A stretch of DNA of 64,000 bases. Origin: Diplonema japonicum (Eukaryota; Protista; Euglenozoa: Diplonemea). A model generated the notes under the pieces. That model was given only the letters and a program-made list of their open reading frames with translations. It made no database searches and had not been told where the DNA came from. Each line of letters opens with the position of its first letter. The stretch's first letter is position 1. The DNA is taken from NCBI GenBank assembly GCA_964019335.1, contig OZ025658.1, positions 186,001-250,000 on the forward strand. The letters are read 5' to 3'. Both the position numbers and the translations under genes were made by a program. This document shows, one piece after another, positions 21,656 to 62,745 of the stretch.

Positions 21656-23566
21656 CTATTCTTTAAGGTATGCGTTTTTGCGCTCACCGGCCGCGCTGTA
21701 CTTAGTCCCCGTTCTGGGGGCTCTGGCGGGTTCCTACTGCGGTGGTAAAACTGCGGGGCAGCCTTGTCCCTGCCGACAACTGTAATTGCTATTGTTGTTG
21801 CGCCGGCCCTTGGGGCAGCAGCAGCGGGGTGGTTGGGTGCTGCGGGTCGACCGCCATCTGCGTGGGGGTGCTCGCTGTGGACCTCGCACCGGACTCGACA
21901 CCTTCCCGCCTTTCTCTTCACCGCCTGCCGTTCTCTTCCTGCTGCCACTGCTTGTCAGCGCAACCGCCGCCAGCTCGGTAAGCTGCTGCTCCACCTCCAT
22001 CAGCCGGGCTTGCGTTCGCTCTGCTCCTCCTGCATCCGGACAATCTTGTTCAGTGCGTCCCGCAGCGCCTTCGACATGGCCTCCTGGTCAGCCTGTCTCC
22101 TCTGCTGTTCGTGATGGAGCTTCGCCATCGTCTCCCCGTGTCGGCGATCTTTCTCCGCGAACTCGGCCTCCTTGGCCTGCCACCACGAGTGGAACGACTG
22201 CTCAGCTTCGCCGTCCCGCTTCGGTTGCTTGGCAGGTCGAGGCTGCGCGGCGGTTCGTAGGGGAGGGAAGTCATTCGACTTCGTGCTCTTCTTTGCCGCA
22301 GGTGGAGAGGCTGGCGTCGGTTTCCTCGGCCCACCCCTCGGTCCCGCTGTGTCGGTACAGGGTGTCCAGGTCTGCCCGGGCCACCACCAGGCATAGCTCG
22401 GCGCAGCCGTCCCTCGTTGACCCCGACCTTGGCTCGACCCGTGCTGCGCATTTGCTCGCAGCCCAGCGGACGAGGTCCCTCCTGGCGCTGTGGAAGTCCT
22501 TTCTGGTCTTCTCTACCAGGTAGACCTCGGCGGTACAGCTTACCACCGCGGGGACCGTCGTCGCCTGCTTGACCTGCTTCAGCGGAGGGCCGCCCTTCGC
22601 GGTCACCCACAGCCTGCGGACACACCTCCCTTTGCCGCCGTCGGTTGCAAGAACCACCTGCTCTTGCTCTCCCTGCATCGTGGGGAGCTTGCTTCTGGAC
22701 ACCAGGGTGGGACCGCTTGTCGCCGGCGTCCATCAGCCACAGCGACGCTTCCTTCTCCATTCCTGCCGGCACGAGCAGGACTGACCTCCTGCCCACCTGC
22801 GGCGTCCAGTCACCAGAGAACGCCTCCCAGCCGTTCGCCACCAGTACCGCGTCTTCCTTCGGCTTCGTCTCGCCGTCTCCGTCCTTGGCCTTCCGCGCGG
22901 CTGCAGCTGCGGTCGCAGCCGCCTTCTTCTTCGCTCCCTCGCTCAGGTAGGGCATAGGGACCTTCGGGTTGTTGTAGGTCCCCGCCGCCGGGAGCTCCGT
23001 GCCCTCGCGCACCTCCAGCGTCACGTAGTGAGCGGCTACGAACCCCAGGTATATGGGGGTGCTCACTACGGGGTTGCGCGCAGCGAAAGACGTGCACAGC
23101 AGCTTCCCTTCTTTCACCTGGTAGCAGGCCAGGTGGCGCCGACATACCTGGCTGACCGCGAGGAGCTGCAGGATGCTCCCCATGCCCCGTCCCTCGCTTG
23201 CACGTACTCCCCGTAGCGCTCTGGGGCGTATAATAGCGCACTGTTGTCGGTGGCTGCCAGATGGCTGGCCACCAGCTCCCTCAGTGCCCCTCCAGCGGAG
23301 GTGCCCTGGTGGATCGCTACCGAGGTCGCTCGTAGAGGCACTCTCCTTCAGTTTTGGAGTAGTCTCTGATCGAGACTCCACCTCCTAGCTTCGCCAGGAG
23401 CTCGGCCTTCGCCTTGCTCACCTCCCCGTTCGTCCCGCGGCCGAAGCCTTCGCCGTTGCCACCCCCCACCATGTGGCACCGTTGCCCGGGGTTCAACCTC
23501 GAGGAGGTCGCTCCCACCGCACTGGACGTCGATGATGTTGTTTAACCCAAATTCAAGAACCCCCGG
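21656..23566 (-). mobile_element. Internally deleted non-LTR retroelement: 5' HDV-like ribozyme, frameshifted OTU-like protease ORF, 3' end AGAATAG, flanked by poly(T)
   Basis: The 3' 113 nt (21656-21768) are near-identical to the end of the RT-bearing element (48640-48760). T14 runs flank both ends on the sense strand. Confidence 0.85.
23437..23563 (-). ncRNA. HDV-like self-cleaving ribozyme at the element 5' end
   Basis: P1 GGGGUUC/GAACCCC; P3-L3 ACC-UCCUCGA-GGU; J1/4 GGGCAAC; P4 UGCCAC/GUGGCA; J4/2 GGCGAA; P2 GCGGU-GGGAGC/GCUUCG-GCCGC. Confidence 0.85.
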
Positions 23567-48605: not shown

Positions 48606-48641
<36 letters not shown>

Positions 48642-51623
48642 ATTCTTTTAAGGTGCGTTTTTGCGCTCACCGGCCGCGCTGTCCTTAGTCTCCGTTGTCC
48701 CCGTTCTGGGGGCTCTGGCGGGTTCCTACTGCGGTGGTAAAACTGCGGGGCAGCCTTGTCGGGGTCTGCGACAGGTACGTGTCACGCAAGCCTTCGATGC
48801 TGCTCATGGTTCGCTCCGGGAGTACTGGCCTCCTGTCATACCCGTGTGTGGTCGGTCCTCCTATACAGCGCGGGGAGTTGACGCGATCCACTCGCGCTGC
48901 TGGGAACGCCGTCCTTCTGCCATCAGCGTGGTACAGGTCCTGGACACGTCTCAGCACATACCTCAGCCTCCTTGCCTTGACGCCCAGGTCCTCCACCTTG
49001 CCCACTTCCCCGCCGTCGTCTAGCGGCAGCTCCATCTCCCGCTCGAAGTCGAGGGCAAGCTCCAGCGTCGTAACCGTCGTGTGCCGTCCAGGGGCGTCAT
49101 CCCACAGCAAGCCACTCAGCCACCTCAGCACCGGCCCCAGCAGCCTGTCCATCACCTTCCCCGATGCTCCCAGCCCACGTAATTCGGCCACCGTCGGCGT
49201 CGGGGTGTGCCCTTCCCGTCACGACCACCCGCCACGGGTATGTCTGCGTCTGCAATGCGCGGTTCGCTTCCACCGCCGTATCCCTCAGCGTGACCACCTC
49301 CAGCAGGTACCTTTGCACCAACAGGGCCCTCGGCTTGTCTTGGCATCCCCTGGGCACTATCCCGTGGAGCGCCGTCGCGTTCGGCATGGTCGCCGGGTCG
49401 AGGCTCGCATACTCTGCCTTGCCCCGCACCGCATCTCCGAGTTCGCATCGCCAGAGGGCGTGCTCCAGCACCTCGGTGTAGCTGCCGTAACGCTCCCCAC
49501 ACACGTCACAGAGGTGCTGCAGCGGGTTGTCCGGCCCCTCCGCCACTCCCCGCACCGCAGGGTACACCGCAAACACCGCCCCAGCAATCAGCCTCCTCAA
49601 CCTGTACGCCGCCATCGGGTTGTTCGCGAGCGCCCTCCACCACCCGTTCGTGACCGGGTCGGCCCCCTCCGGCATGCCGCTGTGGGAGGTCCTCCCTTCT
49701 GCTTGTTCCGCTGCTGTCATGGCCCGTGCCACTTGGCGGATCTCGTGCTTGCGTTCCCGCTCGGTCGCGGTACTCAGCCCCTCCACAAAACTCCAGCTCT
49801 TCCCGATCGCCGGCAGCCATCGTCTCACTAGGGTTCCCACTGGTCCCTGGGCTTCCACGTCGCTCTGCAGGTACAGGGCGGCACACCTTCCCATCCGGTC
49901 CCACAGCTCTGCATCCGACCTACCAACCTTCACCACCGTGCACAACAGTCGATAAAGCGTCACCACCAGCGGGTCCGTCGTGTGCCCCGGCAGCAAGATG
50001 TTCGCTACAGCACACGGTGAGCGCATCTTGAACTTCGGTCCCCAGAGGCATGTCGCAACTCTCGACCGGATTGTGCCTGCATCCACTTTCGAGGGGGGGG
50101 CATACGCAACACCGTAGAGGCAAGAGGGGAGGATGGAGCTGGAGATGATCCTTGCCTTCTGTGAGAATCCCAACGGCATGGCAGCCAGCCTTCCGCACGC
50201 CCGTTCCATTCCTACAAGGGGCTTGGCCCTGTGCTCGCCGTCCATGCAAACCTTGATGCCCAGGGCGCTGATCTCCGTCTTGGCTGCAAGCACTTCCCGC
50301 CCGCATTTCACCGACCCGGACCCTTCTGTGGCGAACATGTCCGTCTTCCTCAGGTTGAGACTCATCCCCGTTAGCAGAGAGAACTCGCCTACCCCCGCTG
50401 CCGCCTTCTCCAGTGCGCTGAGCAGAGCTGCAATCAGGTACACGTCATCTGCGTACGACAGGGAATCTGCCCCGGGCACCTCCGCCATGATCGCCCTCAC
50501 CATCACCAAAAAAAAAAAAGAAAAAAAAAGATCCCCTCACATACTTTGCAACCAAACCGTTATAATACTGAGAAAGAATGGCCGCGGAGTCCATGTCGCT
50601 GTCCTTTGAAGGGCTCTTACCATTTGCCTCGGCGGCACCCGACAGCAAAAGCAGTCTGTCCGACAGCAATCCACCGATTTCAGTACCAATCCATTGCTTG
50701 AAGGTGGGCTCCTCCAACGAGATTCTGTCTACCAAAGAAACAGCGGTTTCACCCTCGGGCCCGGACAGGGCCGCAACGACCTTGTAAAGGTAAGTGGTAA
50801 GCGGGTCTGAGGAATTCTGCCCCGCGAAGGATGCAGGGTCGGTTTTGTTCTGGCATATTGCGAAACACGATGGGATTTTTGTAGGCGGCAACACCCGCGG
50901 CCAGGTCAAGCTCACTCTGTCAAAGGTCAACCGAAGAATGTACAATATACTAGCAGAGAACTCCGATGCAATGTCGGGGACATGCAGTATAAAAGAACCA
51001 CCCTTCGACACTGACAACAAGGCAAGAAGCAGCCTCGCCACTGTGTACGCCCGTTGCGTTCGTGTTTTTGACCCGGCAGGCTCTGCCCCAAGAAGAACTT
51101 GCAGCCCGGCATTTCTCGTCCTTTGCTGCACCGCCCCCGTGAATGCCTTGATATTCGATGGCTCCCTTGGGTCGCCTGTTGTGTCTGCTCCTGTGAAGTG
51201 GAACGCCTTTGGAAGGAATCTCGTTGTTGGGGATTCTTCCAGCCTGGACATAGTCGACCCCATTCCTATCCCGTTTGCGGAGGGGGCGTTTTGTGCGGTG
51301 TTTGAAGCATGGCACAGGCCTTCCACCCAACCCCCTGCACCGCCTTCGATGTCGCCCAGCCATCCCAGGTTTCCCCCGAACTGAAATTTTCTCTCTAGTT
51401 CCAGGCACGCATAGGTGCTCCTGTCCAGGAAGCCCGGTAGCACCGGCCCGAGCACAGGGTCCACCTTCTCCAGGCACCGCAGCCCGCCCCTTTCGAAACA
51501 CGCCTCCTCGTGCGGGGCCAGGTCTTGCAACGTTTTCTCCGAGACAACTCTGTACTGCGGCCTGTCTACTTCCCCATCCCACGCGGTCTCCAGGCAGTCC
51601 CAAAGCTCTGCGAGATCCTCCAT
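48452..51623 (-). CDS. FtsJ/CMTR-like cap 2'-O-methyltransferase homologue; join(48452..48590,50545..51623)
   Basis: GDIEGGAGGW, GADTTGD and KGGSFILHVPD motifs. Removing the LINE-containing intron 48591-50544 joins VAK to NTIPASQF in frame. Confidence 0.75.
48640..50507 (-). mobile_element. 5'-truncated non-LTR retrotransposon (RT C-half, CCHC finger, C-terminal ORF) inside an intron poly(T) tract
   Basis: SYADD, LNLRKT and CDVC..EHALWRC; ends AAGAATAG followed by T32; preceded by T12. Confidence 0.92.
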
Positions 51624-51754
51624 TTTTTTTTCTCCTAACATTTTTGTCCCACAAATGAACAATAGGAAAAAGAAGAAGAAAAAAAAAGACTATTTTGTGG
51701 AAGAAAATAAAATAAAATCTATGGTACACCCCCCCCCTCCCCTTCCCTTTTCGG

Positions 51755-54124: not shown

Positions 54125-57100
54125 CTAACTGTCCCTCCACTGCTCCGGTTCCGGGTCGTCAACCTGAAGGATGTCCACTTCACTAGTATTATCAGCCTTC
54201 TGCATATGACTTCTTGCTTTAAACCAGTCGGAAAGGTAGACAGCAGGGTACAGCGGCCTGTCCCGAAGAATCTCATGAACCGCCTTATTATTATTTTTTT
54301 TTTTTCCCTCCCAAAAAAAAAAACTATTCTGTTAACTGAATCGTCCAATACTACCTATAGGCGCTCTTGCAACGACCACCACAGCCATCGCCAACGTGCC
54401 AAAAAATGGGCTAAACTCGCACACTGGTGTGAGCTTCAAGGGAGCTAAACGTTTCAGACATGACGTGCCACACCCATAGGCCTCACGACCGGGGAGGGGG
54501 GGCATTTATCTTTCGCCCGTAAGCTAGAGTGCGCATGCATCCCCAGCTCGCTTTGGGAGGTGTTGCCAACACCTGGGTCGCTTCGCGGTCCGACCTGCTG
54601 CCCAATTCAAAGCGCGGTTGCGGTGAATCCAAGCCCCCTAAGCATCGACACGATTAACAAAGGGGTTTGTTACGCCGGGATATCTTGTTCACCAATGCTC
54701 CATACGCCCCCTGTTGCCAGTTCGCCGGATGAGCATACTGCAGGGACTTCCACTCATCCGTTGCCCGGTGGGTACCACGAGGAGGTCAGCAACAATTCTA
54801 TACTTTTGGCCACGTAGGGCCTGTTCTACATTTAGTATAGTCCCACCTGAAAAAAAAAAAAAGAGATGAGATAAAGGAGGTTCCTGTTTTAGAACGTCCC
54901 CCTTGTCTCTACTTATCTACCCCTTTCTCCCTTCTGGGGCCTCGGCCTTTCTTTCTTTTTTGGCTGTGTTGCCTTTCTCAAAGTATCCTCCCTTTCTTCT
55001 CGCCACTTTCTGCCCAGTTTCTTAAGGTCCTTCTTGGTTTTCTCTGATGCAAAAACTGGCCTTCTGTTCCATCCCAGACTCTTCTTCGCACCTATGGTTC
55101 TGAGCGCGTGGTTCTTCTTGCTCTCCGCTGGGAAGATCCGCTTGCCTCTGACCTTCTTCTGTATGCGTGCTGTGTCCCACCCTTCTTGGATTCTTTCCAG
55201 GAGGCCGTGGAAACTCCGCGCTTTCTTCTGTATCATGTCTAGATCACCCTTCTTCCCCGTGATCGGCTCGACGCCCAGCGTGTTCTCGAAGTCTAGTACG
55301 AGTTCCATTGTGGTGACTGTCGTCTTCCTCGGTCCATCGTACCACTTCAGCTTTTTGAGCCACTTGACGATGTCTTCACCGTGCTTCATCATCAGGCTCC
55401 TTCCATTCAGGTGGCGCATGAGCGTTTCCTTCCGTTATCTGTTCCCAGGGGTGCGTCGTGTACGTTTCTAGCATTCTCTTGTCCTGGAGAAGCTGGTCCC
55501 GTTTTGCCACCACTTCCAGCAGGTAGTATTGCGTCTTCCTCAGCCGGTGTTGGTGTGTTTGGTGACCACGCGGGAGCATTCCATGTAGCTGCATGCAGAT
55601 TGGCATTTCCGTCTTGTTGGCCACTACTTCTGCATGTACTTCCTTCTGTTGCACCTCCTTCGCCACACTGCATTCCCATAATGCGTGTCGCAGCATGTTG
55701 CTCTCGTCCTCCTCCGCATCGCACGCGTCGCATGTGACCTCGTCTGTTGTTGGTCTCTTGTTCACACGCTCGTGTGTCTCGTCCCCTTCCTCTTCCGAGC
55801 TGTCCTCGCTTTCGCTCTGCTCGCCCTCTGGGGGCCGTCTGGTGATTTTGTCCTGGTACCACGCCTTTGGGTGGGTGTAGAAAACCCCTCCCGCCACGAT
55901 CCTCCGGAGGTCTCTCGCTGCCATTGCTCCTTGTGGTCCGAGTCTCATCAGCTCTCGCCACAGGTCGTTCGTGCGTGGGTCTGCGCCCCGGTCTAACCCC
56001 TCCATCGAGCGTCTTCTGTCCTGTATGTGTTCCGCACGTCCTGACCTTAGCTTTTCTCGCACTACATGTGCGAATTTGTCCTTGTTCTCAGCTAGCATTT
56101 CGGTGAATTGCCCCCAGTTTGTGCTGATCTTCGGGAGCCACCGCTTCATCGCGTTGCCTATCGGGCCCAAAGGTGTCGTTCTTGTCGGGTCTTGGTACCC
56201 TTTGGCAAGTCTCTGGCACCGCTCCCACACCTCTCCCAATTTTCGTCTCGTTCTGTATATGGCTGCTAGTGCTCTGTAGGGCGCTGCTACCTCTGGGTCG
56301 TGTGTGTGTCCGCTGAACAGGTTTGACAGCACCGCCGCTGGTGATCTTGTTCTGTACCTCGGTCCCCACAAGGCGTATGTCGCGCTTGATGTGAGCGATT
56401 TGAGGTATCCTTCCGACGGCGGCGCGAATGCAACATCATACAGACAGCTGGGTAGCACCGTTGTTCGCAGGACTTCCGCTTTCTGCCAGAAAGAGAGCTG
56501 AGTGGTCGCGAGCCTCCGTAGCGTGTCGCCCGCCGCCCTGGCCCTGGTGTTGTCCGTCTGCGTCTGACCATCCGTGCGTATCCTCGCCCCCAGGATCTTA
56601 AAAAAGAAAAAAAAGAAATCATACATCCTCTACCATTTTTGCAATATGCTTTGCTTGTAAATATTCGATATTTTGAGAGCACGTGGCTGACAAAGGCTGC
56701 GCCAGATCGCTGAGGCAATGTCTTGAGTGCAAGGAGGTCGTGCTCTGCCCTTTTCGAGATCTTGTCGAACAGGTGCTTACTTGACGCGACAGCGCCTGCA
56801 AAGAATCACGTTTCTTAATAAAGGTCTCGAAATTGGTTAGCTTGGGCTTCCAGACAGGTGAACGCTGCTGTTCCATGAACTTGGGAACGCACCGCATAAA
56901 CTGAACGTTCTTGCAGTTAATAAGAAGACGCGAGTAGTACACATGAAGCAAGCTTCTCTTGTTTGTCCGTGCGAGAAGCAAAGCACAGGCGGCTTTGATG
57001 ATAGCGAAGTCAAATAATGTTTCATCGAACCTGCCTTCTCGGAGCTGGAGAAGCTTCACAGGGTCGGCAATGACCTTTGCAAGCTGTCTAAGCCGGAGTT

Positions 57101-57601
57101 CTTGGTGGTGTTGGTGAATGCTTCCCACACGTTTTTCCTTAACCTCGTCTATAGAATCCTGCGCGCTTTTTCCCAAGGAAAGCATCATCCACCCAGCGAT
57201 CATGGTGCCCGTCCTCCCGATGCCTTCCTTGCAGTGGACCAACGCCACCCCTCCCTTCGCATTGACTTCGTCAACAAACATAGCGCCCTGGCTTAGCTGC
57301 TGTATTGTGGGCGGGGTCTTGTCTATGATAGAAAGATGCATGTAGTCGATGCTGACAACGGACATTACGTTTTTGTCCAGACCGTCCTCCGTGAGACTTA
57401 GAATGCCCCGTATGTTGTGGTGTATAGATAGGTACTCGATCTGCTCCCGAAGGTGCGACTTGTTTGGATGCCCGCTGCCTGCAATCCGTCCGTTGATCAC
57501 GACAGAGAAAAACGGCTGTGTGAGGGTTTTTTTTTTTTTTTTTTTTTCTTTTTTTATTCTTTGTTTTATTCCTCACACACCGGCAGGTCATCGCTTGTCA
57601 T
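54125..57601 (-). CDS. Dual-specificity phosphatase with a C-terminal RIIa/Dpy-30-like dimerisation motif; join(54125..54283,56625..57515,57581..57601)
   Basis: HCKEGIGRTG active site. Splicing across intron 54284-56624 gives EYLQAKHIAKMVED|AVHEILRDRPLYPAVYLSDWF. Confidence 0.85.
54324..54849 (-). mobile_element. Non-coding SINE-like element (~526 nt) with a 5' HDV-like ribozyme and 3' AGAATAG, between T-runs
   Basis: Begins after T13 and ends CAGAATAG plus T11, sharing AGAATAG with the LINE ends at 21656 and 48640. No long ORF. Confidence 0.7.
54712..54847 (-). ncRNA. HDV-like self-cleaving ribozyme
   Basis: P1 GGUGGG/CCCACC; P2 UGUUGCUG/UGGCAACA; P3-L3 ACC-UCCUCGU-GGU; GGGCAAC; P4 GGAUGAGU/GCUCAUCC; J4/2 GGCGAA. 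J1/2 carries an extra hairpin (CUAUACU/AGUAUAG). Confidence 0.87.
54863..56599 (-). mobile_element. 5'-truncated non-LTR retrotransposon (divergent family) inside an intron poly(T) tract
   Basis: ORFs 55376..56626 and 54913..55419 are homologous to the 48.6-kb LINE (LPSCLY, LWGP...RSP, H..DP, CDAC..RHALWEC, TTVTT.EL.LDFE). Confidence 0.9.
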
Positions 57602-58495
57602 ATCGAGATTCAGCGAGATTGCTAATTTTTTCTTCTTCATTTTTTTTTTTGAAGTACTTTTTTTTTTTTTTTCCCGAGGAACAAAAGTGGGGGGGGGGGG
57701 GGGGGGGGGGGGATCTTAACGCCACAGATTCTGTGGTTTCCCTGGGTGTGATATTTGGCAATGGTGTGTCTTTACCCTGGTATTTCTATCTTGGGTCGAT
57801 ACTGAGGTGGTGCCGTGGGTCTCCGCGTCGTTTAGGGCCGTTGGGTGGTGTGTGCAGTCCTTGTTTCGACTAGCTTAGACCGACTAGCTTCCCCGGTGGG
57901 ATTGGTATCGGACATCGTCTCTTCCGGCCTCTTTCTGGGTGCCCTTTTTTGAATTGATTTTTAAGGGTAAATTTGGGCTGGCGTTTTTTTTTTTTTTATT
58001 TTTTCATTTTCTTGCAAAGTTAGGGCAGCATTTATTATTTATATTTTTCATATTTTCCGCGCAGGACCCCGGATGCGAGAAGTGGCCGGGCTGTATTGCA
58101 TTGAAAGCCCTTTGCGCAAAAGATTTTTTTTTTTTCAAATCGTCTCTATAAAGACGCTCGTTGGTAGATGGTTAAAAGAAAAAAAAGAAAACGAAGAAGG
58201 GAGCTGGGGAAGAGGGTAAAAAAAAAGGGGGGGGGGCTTTTTTATTTACCCTCCTTTTTTTTTTTGTATTTAACAAAGTACTGCCCAGTTTTCTTGTAAG
58301 AAACGAAAAAAGAGTAGCTATGCAGTACTTGTGCAAAAGAAAAAAAATGCAAATACCAACTCTTTCTTACTTCGTCTTTTCTTTCTTCATATGTTTGTTT
58401 TTCTGCGTTATACAGTTTTTGTAAATAAAAGAAATGAAAAAAAAAAAAAGAAGAAAAATAAAGAAGAAGAGGTAGTGGAAAAGAAAGGGGAGGTA

Positions 58496-60131: not shown

Positions 60132-62177
60132 TCACAATTTCGACCCAAGCACCCTCTCACGAATGGTGCCTGACTCGTACGCCTTAATGAGCTCCTTGAG
60201 CTCAAAGCAACGCTTCATCAATTTCACACCTTTGTCGGTATCCTTGATTCGCATTCTGGTGGTGTTGTGCCGCACAATGTGCGTCTTGGCATGGTTGTCG
60301 GCGTGGCGAGTGATCGCCTCGGCCTTCCCTTTGAAAGTCTTGTGCTCCGCAAGAAGCATCCCATAACTGTTGGAGATTAAGGTGTACCCGGCAATGCCGG
60401 TTTCCTTCTGATACGCCTTGGAAAACCCCCCATCGATAACAATGAGTTTTCCGTCAGATTTGATAGGAGACTCTCCCTTGGCAACTTTGACAGGGGTGTG
60501 ACCGTTCACAATAATACCAGTAGAAGGATCGCACCCAAATTCTTTAAGCACGACCGTAGCTACCTTCGCATCATGTCTCATCTTAAGGTAAGGGTCTTTC
60601 GGCTCGGAGTGCGTCTTTTTGTCGTCGATAAAGTATCGTTCAAATGTAGTCATTCTACCCTTTCCGAACAATGGTGATTTTGCGCCCGTCCACAAGTAAT
60701 ACATCATGTCCAACCCGTCTTGTTTCTCCTTGGACCCCTCTGGTGATGTGATACCCTGTCGAACTTTCTCCTCGAGAGCATCGCAGTAAGCCTTCCCCTT
60801 TAAGTACTTTCCATTGATCAAACATTCTTCAAGCGATCCGTCTTCCTTCATAGGAAGCGCACCGTGAAGCAGAAGGTTACCATTATGAACCGTGTACATC
60901 TCACCGTGGGACCAAAGGAAGTTCATGTGTCTTTGCAACCACCTGCTGTTTTTGAAGGAAGCTTGAAGCTGGTCGAGACAGTAGCGTTCCATGGGTGTTA
61001 GTTCGTGTGGGTTCTTCGGGTCGATAGTTGGGAAGAACGTGTCGTTTAAAGGGTACGTTTTCCCGTTGATGACGATGGTGCCCGCCTCCTTGTCGAGGGT
61101 GTGGAGCATGATTCGATCGTCCATCAAAAACTCCGGCTGTCGTCTGACCAAATGCGCTTCGAGTTTGAACTGAATAACCGCAATGGCCTTTTGCATTTTA
61201 GCAAGGAGGATCATGTCCTGTTCGGTCCGGGCTTTTTCCGTACTTTTCTTCGGTTTGAAGATCTTGTACGCTTTCTCATCGTCGGCGTAGTAGTGAAGAG
61301 CAAGCTGTGCCAACGGAAGAATGGCGATCCCGTACGCATCTTCTAATGTAGCCATGTTTGAATACCGCAGCGCGATTCTCACCGTCGTGCAAAGGCATAC
61401 TTCGCTTCCAGCTGCCGCTCCCATCCAAAGCATGTCGTGGTTGCCCCACTGAATATCAACTGAATGGTAATGTGTTAACTCTTCCATGATGTCATGAGCT
61501 GCCGGGCCTCTATCGTATATGTCACCTACAATGTGAAGGTGGTCGACAGCTAGCCTTCCAATGAGGTTGGCTAGAGTGATGATCACGTCGGGTGCCCTGC
61601 CGGACTCGATGACAGATGAGAGTACTGTTGTGTAGTAGCTTTCTTTGTTGGATTCGACACGGCCTGTCGTCCAGCTGTTTCCCTCGTTGATGGGAGGTTT
61701 GTGGTCGAGGAGTTCCATGATCATATGTTCGTATTCCGACGGGCATGCTTTCTGAACGTGTTTCGTGGTGTATTTTGATGCGACAGACTGTGCGATCGTT
61801 GTCAGGTTGTTGAGGTTTATTTTGTACCATGTTTGAAGATCGCCGCCTTTTCTGCTTCGTTCTTGAAGAACGTCTGATGGGTAATAGATGAGGGCGGCCA
61901 GTGCTGACTGTTCGTCTTCATTCATAGTGCCCTCGATGTCGTCGCATCCAGCGGGGAACATCTCCGAGATGTGTCGTTTAACCACGCCTGAGCACGATCG
62001 CAAGACGTGGTGGAATGCCTCATACTCCCCGTGAATGTCTGACAGGAAGTGTTCTGTTCCCTTCGGCAGCGATATGATCGTTTCAAGATTCACCACTTCT
62101 GTTGCAGCGGCTTGTCTGTTCGGGTACTGCTCCGAGAGAAGCTTGAGATAGTCCATATCCGGTGGGAAATGAGTCAT
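60132..62177 (-). CDS. fbp: Class 3 (Firmicute-type) fructose-1,6-bisphosphatase
   Basis: LPKGTEHFLSDIHGEYEAF, GDIYDRGP, DIQWGNHD, NGHTPVK and IDGGFSKAYQ..TGIAGYTL; intronless; start MTHFPP at 62177. Confidence 0.95.
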   Translation of the reverse strand: MTHFPPDMDYLKLLSEQYPNRQAAATEVVNLETIISLPKGTEHFLSDIHGEYEAFHHVLRSCSGVVKRHISEMFPAGCDDIEGTMNEDEQSALAALIYYPSDVLQERSRKGGDLQTWYKINLNNLTTIAQSVASKYTTKHVQKACPSEYEHMIMELLDHKPPINEGNSWTTGRVESNKESYYTTVLSSVIESGRAPDVIITLANLIGRLAVDHLHIVGDIYDRGPAAHDIMEELTHYHSVDIQWGNHDMLWMGAAAGSEVCLCTTVRIALRYSNMATLEDAYGIAILPLAQLALHYYADDEKAYKIFKPKKSTEKARTEQDMILLAKMQKAIAVIQFKLEAHLVRRQPEFLMDDRIMLHTLDKEAGTIVINGKTYPLNDTFFPTIDPKNPHELTPMERYCLDQLQASFKNSRWLQRHMNFLWSHGEMYTVHNGNLLLHGALPMKEDGSLEECLINGKYLKGKAYCDALEEKVRQGITSPEGSKEKQDGLDMMYYLWTGAKSPLFGKGRMTTFERYFIDDKKTHSEPKDPYLKMRHDAKVATVVLKEFGCDPSTGIIVNGHTPVKVAKGESPIKSDGKLIVIDGGFSKAYQKETGIAGYTLISNSYGMLLAEHKTFKGKAEAITRHADNHAKTHIVRHNTTRMRIKDTDKGVKLMKRCFELKELIKAYESGTIRERVLGSKL

Positions 62178-62745
62178 TTTTTGCTTTTTTTTTTTTTTCC
62201 CCCTTCTTTTGTGGAGGGATGATGGAGGGGAGAATGGCATGAAGAGAGGAGAAAAAAAAAAAAGGGAAAAAAAAAAAGAAAAAGAAAACTCGGAGGGTTT
62301 TTTCTTTTTGTTTTGTTTGTTGTTTTTTTTTTTTTTTTTTCTTCTTTCGTGCTGCCTACTTTGGTTGTCACAGGATGGGTAGAGGAAAACAGTGTAAAAA
62401 ACCAAAGATACCCAGATTTCATCAAAGGCATTTATTTATTTATTTATTTATTTATTTACTGTAAAACAAAAAAGAAGAGAAAAAATATCCGGGGGGGGGG
62501 GGGGGGGGGGGTTTGTCACTCCGGCATTTATTTTTCTCTTCCGACCTTTTTCTCCCCAGGCATCAATTATGTCCTTACAGAAAGGGAGGAATACTTCCTG
62601 TGCCCAGATCTCTGAGGGTATCCTCACCCCCTCCCCCAAGCCGAAAATGCCGGCTGGAGAAAAATATCCGGGCTTTTTTCGCTTCCGGGAGTTTGTCACT
62701 CCGGTATTTTCTCTGGAATTTTTCGCTTTACAGTATTTATTTATG

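What the first reader, a model, noticed from the sequence alone, without database searches (positions are those of the whole stretch)
54324..54849. Ribozyme-headed SINE-like RNA in sense orientation inside a host intron
A second HDV fold has the same core as 23437-23563 but entirely different, compensatory helices, which is natural covariation support. It is followed by ~390 nt of hairpin-rich non-coding sequence and the family terminus AGAATAG. It abuts the 3' T-run of a different LINE, implying re-insertion into a previous element's T-tract, or alternatively a LINE with a 3' ribozyme module. Active cleavage would cut the phosphatase pre-mRNA within the intron (compare CPEB3). The junction T13-CAG also mimics a splice acceptor.
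Basis: partly seen in the sequence, partly recalled or inferred. Interest (0 to 1): 0.85.

Follow-up and report, generated by a model that had tools for sequence, protein, structure and literature searches.

The report
Ribozyme-headed short retroposon inside an intron
A young 526-base jumping element that starts with a predicted self-cutting (HDV-like) RNA sits, in the gene's own direction, inside a normally spliced intron of a phosphatase gene of a diplonemid protist. It is a local version of a strategy already known from trypanosomes and fly R2 elements.

Summary
On the minus strand, 54847-54711 fits a complete HDV-like ribozyme fold. Its single-stranded core is identical to that of the fold at 23563-23437, and 8 of the 16 nested pairs differ by compensatory changes.

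The 526-nt unit is a mobile family of its own:
- At least 11 full copies are 98.5-99.8% identical to their consensus.
- 5'-truncated copies keep the same 3' end.
- About 30 copies exist in all, each with different flanks, so the unit is not a 3' module of the neighbouring LINE.
- It has no coding capacity and no tRNA-like head.
- It is flanked by T-rich duplications.

It shares with an autonomous LINE family (type-B ribozyme head, intact 1377-aa frames) only the ribozyme core and the terminus AGAATAG plus a T-run.

The host intron is real. A transcriptome-derived protein, 100% identical, joins ...KMVED to AVHEIL..., which removes exactly 54284-56624. The host mRNA is therefore still made.

Self-cleavage is inferred, not shown. 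In two families the copies become alike exactly at the predicted cleavage G, preceded by 0-3 variable extra bases.

The closest analogues are R2 SIDEs and NARTc/L1Tc. This scan had already found the same system on other DNA of this genome (s1-865589, s1-865580). "Hairpin-rich" is not above chance. Interest is moderate.

The parts
54324..54849 (-). 526-nt non-autonomous retroposon copy (524 nt from G1 at 54847, plus 2 extra bases CA)
   Evidence: At least 11 full copies are 98.5-99.8% identical to consensus. 5'-truncated copies share the 3' end, and flanks differ. No ORF exceeds 85 aa.
54711..54847 (-). Predicted HDV-like self-cleaving ribozyme (type A), with cleavage predicted 5' of G54847
   Evidence: Helices and core found by script. 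Weak Rfam HDV hits. Compensatory changes against type B. This copy is identical to the family consensus.
54798..54840 (-). Hairpin insert in J1/2 (CUAUACU/AGUAUAG outer stem, GGCC/GGCC inner stem)
   Evidence: Large J1/2 loops are known in R2 ribozymes (PMC3414825).
54848..54849 (-). Extra dinucleotide CA between the T-run and G1
   Evidence: Present in about 13 of 20 copies and absent in 5. It varies within one subfamily. Type-B copies show CCG, G, AAG, CA, AA and CA here.
54850..54862 (-). T13 run: the tail/flank of the upstream LINE piece and the 5' flank of the short element
54313..54323 (-). T11 run 3' of the element (T-rich duplication or tail)
54324..54330 (-). Terminus AGAATAG, shared with LINE48 and the 1.9-kb element
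54863..56599 (-). 5'-truncated piece of a different LINE family (ORF2 C-terminal part plus a 3' ORF), ending CTCATCTC + T13
   Evidence: 34% identical (E 2e-65) and 31% identical (E 6e-15) to the two ORFs of LINE48. Weak zf-RVT hit.
54284..56624 (-). Intron 2 (GTATGA...AATAAG, 2341 nt) of the dual-specificity phosphatase gene, carrying both retroelements
   Evidence: The splice-site features match PMC12621601.
56625..57515 (-). Exon 2 of the phosphatase gene (DSPc domain)
54125..54283 (-). Exon 3 (52 codons plus stop)
57581..57640 (-). Exon 1 (20 codons). Intron 1 is 57516-57580: 65 nt, GT..AG, A-rich.
23437..23563 (-). Type-B HDV-like ribozyme heading a 1.9-kb element (down to 21656). The same head precedes intact LINEs elsewhere.
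48640..51700 (-). 5'-truncated LINE ('LINE48') ending AAAGAATAG + T25, a member of the presumed autonomous partner family

Best explanation
54324-54849 (minus strand) is one young copy of a roughly 30-copy, non-coding, non-autonomous non-LTR retroposon of a diplonemid. The genome fits Diplonema japonicum.

The element has no promoter of its own that I could recognise. It lies in the transcription direction of its host genes, so it is transcribed as part of host RNA; here that RNA is intron 2 of a three-exon dual-specificity phosphatase gene.

Its first 137 nt fold as an HDV-like ribozyme. I infer that this ribozyme cuts the co-transcript just 5' of G54847 and so makes the 5' end of the transposition RNA, as in R2, R2-SIDEs and L1Tc/NARTc.

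Its 3' end, ...AGAAUAG followed by U/T, is the only tail feature shared with an autonomous LINE family. That family has a type-B ribozyme head, intact 1377-aa frames and the same terminus. I infer that its reverse transcriptase copies the short RNA in trans. Priming would come from a nick in the A-run strand of a T-tract. That would give T-rich target duplications and, often, 0-3 extra bases (mostly CA) at the 5' junction.

This copy landed in the T-tract beside an earlier truncated LINE, inside what was a short intron of about 55-65 nt. The intron is still removed correctly.

Shown here: the fold, its covariation, family mobility, independence from the LINE, the shared terminus, the orientation bias, and the splicing.

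Inferred: self-cleavage in vivo, the identity of the partner, and the priming mechanism.
For: Fold:
- Fold and covariation.
- The type-A-only covariance model places type B at exactly 23440-23563 as the top hit in 7 kb.

Mobility:
- Family copies.
- The point where copies become alike is G1 of P1 in both ribozyme types, preceded by variable extra bases. This is the pattern described for R2 and R2 SIDE junctions (PMC3414825).
- No ORF, tRNA or Rfam head.

Partner LINE:
- Type-B cores lie 4.5-5.9 kb upstream, on the same strand, of LINE48-like ORF matches in 6 loci; several of these have open frames of 1377 aa.
- AGAATAG + T8 lies 450-530 nt downstream of such matches in at least 7 more loci.
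- AGAATAG + T-run closes the short element, LINE48 and the 1.9-kb element.

Orientation: the longest flanking open frame is on the element's strand in 27 of 30 loci. T-runs outnumber A-runs on that strand only 1.2-2 fold.

T-rich duplications are visible at imperfect sites (L004, L005, L009, L024, L025).

Intron. The 5' splice site GTATG, the A-rich 3' tract and the short median intron length match PMC12621601.
Against: - No cleavage assay exists, and no reads could show RNA ends. All runs laid were contigs.
- One contig of run X2 runs across the predicted cleavage site into another flank. Uncleaved RNA, or DNA, therefore exists.
- CA is retained in most copies. That could mean uncleaved read-through RNA is the usual template.
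- Rfam scores are below gathering, and P1 has only 6 pairs, with G1-C rather than G1-U.
- The tail shares just about 9 nt plus T's with the LINE, so the partner assignment is weak.
- No LINE with the type-A head was found.
- Two truncated copies (L018, L021) lack a 5' T-run. It therefore stays open whether the T-run is a tail or a duplication.
- Orientation was called from crude ORF lengths, and some loci are duplicates of one event.
Confidence: 0.78

Rival explanations
1. The ribozyme fold is present, but it does not set the 5' end. The template would be uncleaved host read-through RNA, and the 5' junction would form where the cDNA's A-run, copied from the source copy's upstream T-run, anneals to the target T-tract. 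On this view the ribozyme is a relic or serves another role.
For: CA, which lies upstream of the predicted cut, is kept in about 13 of 20 copies. T-runs lie on both sides of nearly all copies. A contig spans the cleavage site.
Against: Junction bases vary within one subfamily and among type-B LINE copies: CCG, G, AAG, CA, AA. Five copies join the T-run directly to G1. The head of 11 young copies keeps every helix. Two ribozyme types with compensatory helices argue for selection on the fold.
Confidence: 0.13
2. The 526 nt are a 3' module (UTR) of the LINE that ends at 54850, not a separate element.
For: The two abut directly in this window.
Against: About 30 copies with unrelated upstream flanks. 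Many contigs carrying that LINE's tail diverge at 54850. The LINE piece has its own terminus plus T13.
Confidence: 0.01
3. It is a classical Pol III SINE, and its T-run is the terminator.
For: A T-run follows every copy.
Against: No tRNA, 5S or 7SL-like head. The LINEs of the system carry the same T-run. Orientation follows the host genes.
Confidence: 0.03
4. It is a host-domesticated intronic ribozyme that regulates the phosphatase gene (CPEB3-like).
For: Sense orientation inside a conserved intron.
Against: This copy is one of many near-identical young copies. Homologues P0002 and P0004 have only 16-39 extra residues at this point, which leaves room for a short intron and not for a 2.3-kb one.
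Confidence: 0.03

Closest known systems
R2 SIDEs of Drosophila (R2Dwi_SIDE; Eickbush and Eickbush 2012, PMC3414825)
   Same: Short (529 bp) non-coding element. It has a 5' HDV-like ribozyme that differs from the LINE's mainly by compensatory changes and in a large J1/2 loop, a unique centre, and a LINE-type 3' end. It depends on a host co-transcript. Its 5' junctions carry 0-2 non-templated bases. Hybrid SIDEs show that tails can be exchanged.
   Different: R2 SIDEs sit only in 28S rDNA, end in poly(A), and share long 5' and 3' stretches with R2. Here the targets are T-tracts in Pol II units and introns. The end is AGAATAG + T-run, only about 9 nt of tail are shared, and no LINE with this head was found.
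L1Tc/NARTc, ingi/RIME and SIDER of trypanosomatids (Pr77/L1TcRz; PMC3185411, PMC3383444, PMC4035085)
   Same: Euglenozoan LINEs and their short partners begin with an HDV-like ribozyme that frees the RNA from polycistronic co-transcripts. The short partners are scattered between genes.
   Different: L1TcRz is a compact 77-nt hallmark that is also a promoter, and those elements end in poly(A). Here the ribozyme is 137 nt with a J1/2 hairpin, there is a T-run end, and no promoter is shown. Sequence homology to Pr77 was not tested.
CPEB3 and other intronic HDV-like ribozymes
   Same: A sense-strand HDV-like fold inside a spliced intron of a protein-coding gene.
   Different: CPEB3 is a single, conserved host locus. 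This is a recent copy of a mobile family.

Membership tests
HDV-like self-cleaving ribozyme | P1 helix starting at the cleavage site, closed by the P1.1 GG and followed by GCAAC-type J1.1/4 | tested here: met
   GGUGGG/CCCACC, 6 of 7 pairs, then GGGCAAC. 3 of 6 P1 pairs are compensatory against type B.
HDV-like self-cleaving ribozyme | P2 pseudoknot, P3 with an L3 carrying CC, and P4 | tested here: met
   P2 9/9, P3 3/3, L3 UCCUCGU, P4 7/7. 5 of 7 P4 pairs are compensatory.
HDV-like self-cleaving ribozyme | Catalytic C in J4/2 (GGCGAA-type) | tested here: met
   GGCGAA at 54726-54721, identical in type B.
HDV-like self-cleaving ribozyme | Reaches the Rfam gathering score of an HDV family | tested here: not met
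   RF00094 21.6 against 50 bits; RF02682 18.9 against 44; RF01787 15.7 against 37. The alignment drops P1 because of the 45-nt J1/2 insert.
HDV-like self-cleaving ribozyme | Self-cleavage | not testable with these tools
   Only indirect support: the family's 5' boundary is at G1 in two ribozyme types.
Non-autonomous non-LTR retroposon (SIDE/NARTc type) | Dispersed multi-copy, non-coding, with 5'-truncated copies that keep a fixed 3' end | tested here: met
Non-autonomous non-LTR retroposon (SIDE/NARTc type) | Target-site duplications | tested here: inconclusive
   T-rich repeats lie on both sides and are similar at imperfect sites. In homopolymers they cannot be told from a T tail, and L018 and L021 lack the 5' run.
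Non-autonomous non-LTR retroposon (SIDE/NARTc type) | 3' end shared with an autonomous LINE of the same genome | tested here: inconclusive
   Only ..A(C/A)AGAATAG + T-run is shared. That terminus closes a LINE family with intact frames.
Non-autonomous non-LTR retroposon (SIDE/NARTc type) | Arose by internal deletion of the LINE (long 5' and 3' identity) | tested here: not met
   The type-A head is found only on short elements. The body is found only within the family. The tail is unlike LINE48 apart from the terminus.
Classical Pol III SINE | tRNA-, 7SL- or 5S-derived head | tested here: not met
   ARAGORN finds none. Rfam finds none.
Pr77/L1TcRz hallmark elements | Conserved 77-nt 5' hallmark sequence | not tested
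   No reference sequence was available through the tools. The size and the J1/2 architecture differ (PMC4035085).

The most novel reading that the evidence does not exclude
These promoter-less, ribozyme-headed retroposons may live entirely on host Pol II transcripts (spacers and introns). They would integrate in a transcription-coupled, strand-specific way into T-tracts, and each insertion would regenerate a T-tract. That would explain both the roughly 9:1 sense bias, which T-run asymmetry (1.2-2:1) cannot, and the stacking of elements. In introns the ribozyme would compete with splicing and impose a tunable cost on the host gene.
Probability: 0.3. Interest if true: 0.65.

Novelty: new variant of a known kind. 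Interest (0 to 1): 0.45.

Why it matters
The finding extends the strategy of a ribozyme freeing a retroposon from a host co-transcript from trypanosomatids and insect rDNA to diplonemids, a very abundant marine group. I found no paper linking nuclear ribozymes or these elements to diplonemids.

It adds two unusual traits: a T-run/T-tract end instead of poly(A), and a strong sense-orientation bias.

This copy is a natural test case for what a self-cleaving RNA does inside a spliced intron, because the host mRNA is still made. It also matters for annotation. The gene's stop-containing 'ORF end' at 56619 is an intron start, and the 2.3-kb intron is almost all retroelement.

Tried and rejected
- Rfam at gathering threshold: no hit.
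- MFE folding of the ribozyme, tail and body: z-scores of 0.55, about 0 and 0.16. This is uninformative for a pseudoknot and argues against 'hairpin-rich'.
- MAFFT alignment of types A and B mis-paired P2' with P4' and was dropped.
- A covariance model built from type A alone finds type B only weakly (9.6 bits, E 0.1 in 7 kb).
- Metagenome scan with the core pattern: 47 contigs, mostly compact ribozymes with P1 about 15 nt upstream and none with this architecture. It says nothing about the family. L065, a human-gut metagenome contig, was left out of the script.
- A simple search for the P1 complement in a 139-nt upstream window discriminates poorly (chance 4-14%). The position of P1 at the family boundary is the informative part.
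- L032: a head fragment in front of a 1357-aa ORF turned out to be a host gene, not a LINE.
- The tail-like 170-nt segment in arrays of about 8-kb period on contig C66, and repeated on C95, is intergenic (checked on C66) and lacks AGAATAG. I read it as an old copy amplified with the arrays.
The type-C head (C41:98468) and full-length LINE copies could therefore not be read.
- Exons were searched and compared one by one, by reference.
Full report
**1. What is there**

Read on the minus strand, the stretch runs as follows:
- ...CTCATCTC-T13-CA|GGTGGGACTATAC... at 54862-54835;
- ...CAGTTAACAGAATAG, ending at 54324;
- then T11, then GGGAGGG-A12-TAATAATAAG|GCGG.

Rfam at its curated thresholds finds nothing in the window. 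With relaxed thresholds the three best ribozyme hits on 54712-54804(-) are HDV families: RF00094 at 21.6 bits, RF02682 at 18.9 and RF01787 at 15.7. All are far below gathering. The printed alignment shows why. The core (CCUCCUCGUGG, GGGCAAC, P4, GGCGAA) aligns, but P1 is lost because a 45-nt hairpin sits in J1/2.

**2. The fold**

A script located every helix.

| Element | Type A (54847-54711) | Type B (23563-23437) |
|---|---|---|
| P1 | GGUGGGA/ACCCACC, 6/7 | 7/7 |
| P2 | UUGUUGCUG/UGGCAACAG, 9/9 | 10/11 |
| P3 | ACC/GGU, 3/3 | 4/4 |
| P4 | GGAUGAG/CUCAUCC, 7/7 | 7/8 |
| L3 | UCCUCGU | UCCUCGA |
| J1.1/4 | GGGCAAC | GGGCAAC |
| J4/2 | GGCGAA | GGCGAA |

The helix sequences of the two types are unrelated.

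- A covariance model built from type-A copies only (P1, P3, P4) was run with filters off. It places type B as the best hit in 7 kb with exact ends 23440-23563, though at only 9.6 bits.
- On the resulting alignment, 96.9% of cells pair and 8 of 16 pairs change on both sides. Partners slid by 1-3 columns give 19-48% paired and 0-2 double changes. That alignment is fitted to the structure, so it leans towards it.
- The core pattern occurs twice in the window against none in 100 shuffles, and 28 times in the genome against 4 for the reversed control.

The remark 'hairpin-rich' is not. The 387-nt body has z = 0.16 and the tail z of about 0 against shuffles.

**3. A mobile family of its own**

The genome (62.5 Mb, 132 contigs) holds:
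- at least 11 full-length copies 98-100% identical to this one;
- 5'-truncated copies starting at positions 124, 169, 186, 215, 233 and 342, all ending in AGAATAG;
- decayed copies.

The central 189 nt occur about 30 times and only in this family. Eleven copies are 98.5-99.8% identical to the consensus, so the burst is recent.

Every copy has different flanks. In run X4, 33 contigs carrying the upstream LINE's tail diverge at 54850. The refutation condition 'always attached to the LINE' therefore fails in both directions.

There is no ORF above 85 aa and no tRNA-like head.

The same 160-nt head also precedes a different short element with another body and tail (CCACTTAGA + T18) in L031. Heads and tails are therefore combined in more than one way.

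**4. Ends and flanks**

Nearly all copies have T-rich sequence on both sides. At imperfect sites the two sides resemble each other, for example L004 with TTTATTTTTATTTATTTT against TTTATTTTTAATTTTATTTT, and also L005, L009, L024 and L025. This looks like a target duplication of T-tracts.

Two truncated copies (L018, L021) have the T-run on the 3' side only. Some T's may therefore belong to the element. This cannot be settled in homopolymers.

The copies become alike at G1 of P1. Between the T-run and G1 lie:
- CA in about 13 of 20 copies;
- nothing in 5;
- CAA, A/TA or CG in the rest.

One subfamily, marked by A at alignment site 519, contains both CA and CA-less junctions.

In six type-B copies the bases before GGGGTTC are CCG, G, AAG, CA, AA and CA. 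A fixed start at the predicted cleavage base with 0-3 variable added bases is the pattern reported for R2 and R2-SIDE junctions (PMC3414825). It is my main indirect argument that the ribozyme cuts in vivo.

The strong preference for CA remains unexplained. It leaves room for the rival reading that uncleaved RNA is often the template.

**5. The partner**

AGAATAG + T-run closes three minus-strand elements in the window:
- the short element;
- a 5'-truncated LINE (about 51700-48640, 'LINE48');
- the 1.9-kb type-B-headed element (23563-21656).

The last two share about 150 nt of tail. The short element shares only ..AGAATAG + T's.

Genome-wide, AGAATAG + T8 occurs 245 times against 8 for the control.

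LINE48's 470-aa frame has 893 first-look candidates, including 95%- and 82%-identical copies inside open frames of 1377 aa.
- In six loci a type-B ribozyme core lies 4.5-5.9 kb upstream on the same strand.
- In at least seven further loci AGAATAG + T8 lies 450-530 nt downstream.

So an apparently intact LINE family with a type-B head and this terminus exists, and it is the best candidate driver.

No LINE with the type-A head was found.

The piece directly upstream of the short element (56599-54863) is a truncated LINE of another family, 34% and 31% identical to LINE48's two frames, with its own terminus.

**6. The host gene and the intron**

The ORF 57500-56619 carries a dual-specificity phosphatase domain. 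It stops at TGA right after GAT|GTATGA. The 52 codons from 54283 encode AVHEIL...WRDS*.

A database search with exon 2 alone found P0001, a 369-aa complete ORF from a EukProt Trinity transcriptome:
- it is 100% identical over the whole exon;
- its residues 318-369 are 52/52 identical to the downstream exon;
- they follow directly on ...AKMVED.

Independently, a 967-nt contig of run X1 (97.5% identical, probably RNA of a relative) joins 54282 to 56624.

The gene has three exons: 57640-57581, 57515-56625 and 54283-54125. Intron 1 is 65 nt, GT..AG and A-rich.

The 5' site G|GTATG, the A-rich stretch before the 3' site and the short typical length (median 41 nt) match what is published for D. japonicum (PMC12621601). 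The assembly size matches its genome note (62.3 Mb, PMC13598402).

Without the two insertions, intron 2 would be about 55-65 nt. The distant homologues P0002 and P0004 carry 16 and 39 extra residues, beginning with V, at exactly this point. I read these as short introns translated through by gene prediction, which would make the intron position old.

I compared the exons one at a time and submitted no joined model.

**7. Orientation**

In 27 of 30 loci the longest open frame in the flanks is on the element's strand. In the window all three elements and the host genes examined (peptidase M76, inositol-phosphatase-like, DSP phosphatase, class-3 FBPase, ChaC-like) are on the minus strand.

On that strand, T-runs of 10 or more outnumber A-runs only 100:86, and runs of 15 or more by 45:23. 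Choice of T-tracts alone would give roughly 55-66% sense insertions (my estimate: P of about 0.003 for 27 or more of 30 at 66%).

Caveats: the ORF-length call is crude, and a few loci are duplicates of one event.

**8. Mechanism and comparison**

The best reading is a SIDE/NARTc-like parasite of a ribozyme-headed LINE. It would be transcribed passively within host RNA, released at its 5' end by self-cleavage, and reverse-transcribed at nicked T-tracts by a LINE enzyme that recognises little more than ...AGAAUAG(U)n.

It is not a member of the SIDE class in the strict sense, because it does not derive from a LINE by internal deletion. It is not a Pol III SINE either.

For the host, a cut inside intron 2 would separate exons 2 and 3. 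The transcript evidence shows that the mature mRNA is nevertheless made. I cannot say what fraction is lost.

The T13-CAG 'acceptor' is a resemblance only.

**9. Novelty**

Ribozyme-headed LINEs and short partners are well documented in trypanosomatids (PMC3185411, PMC3383444, PMC4035085) and in R2 and its SIDEs (PMC3414825). I found nothing on them in diplonemids.

The T-run end, T-tract targeting and sense bias make this a new variant. This scan had already described the system on other pieces of this genome (s1-865589, s1-865580, s1-867043). What this window adds:
- the intronic case, with proof of splicing;
- the formal covariation count;
- the junction statistics.

Noticed in passing
L031:7380-8197 (minus strand; G000 C64): Another short element carries the same 160-nt type-A ribozyme head (99% identical), but with a different body containing an Ala/Pro-rich 235-aa open frame and a different terminus (CCACTTAGA + T18).
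   Followed up: partly
L062:200-380 (G000 C66, four copies about 8.1 kb apart) and G000 C95 (seven copies at irregular spacing): A 170-nt segment 91-93% identical to the short element's tail, but lacking AGAATAG, recurs in these arrays. On C66 it lies between ORFs. It is probably an old truncated copy amplified with the arrays.
   Followed up: partly
window 57516-57580: Intron 1 of the phosphatase gene: 65 nt, GT..AG, with a 21-nt A-run before the 3' splice site. It is a clean example of the A-rich tract reported for D. japonicum introns.
   Followed up: yes
window 60132-62405 (minus strand): An intronless 757-aa ORF with a full-length match to the Firmicute-type class 3 fructose-1,6-bisphosphatase (PF06874, E 4.6e-261) in a eukaryote.
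   Followed up: no
G000 C41:98468-98493: A third ribozyme core variant (P1' strand CCTGAGAA-type) suggests a further head family.
   Followed up: no
L032:6972-7219 (G000 C7): A decayed head fragment (positions 3-193, core mutated) lies just upstream of the start codon of a 1357-aa ORF with a signal-peptide-like N-terminus and no Pfam match.
   Followed up: partly
window 54386-54856, run X2: A 1216-nt contig at depth of about 100 (host exons are at about 2-3) covers the element, crosses the predicted cleavage site and continues 746 nt into a different upstream flank. If the run is RNA, an uncleaved co-transcript of another copy is abundant.
   Followed up: no
window 54863-54980 (minus strand): The last 118 nt of the upstream LINE piece fold better than shuffles (z = -2.36, 3 of 200 shuffles as good), with a stem-loop just before its terminus. 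The AGAATAG tails do not.
   Followed up: no
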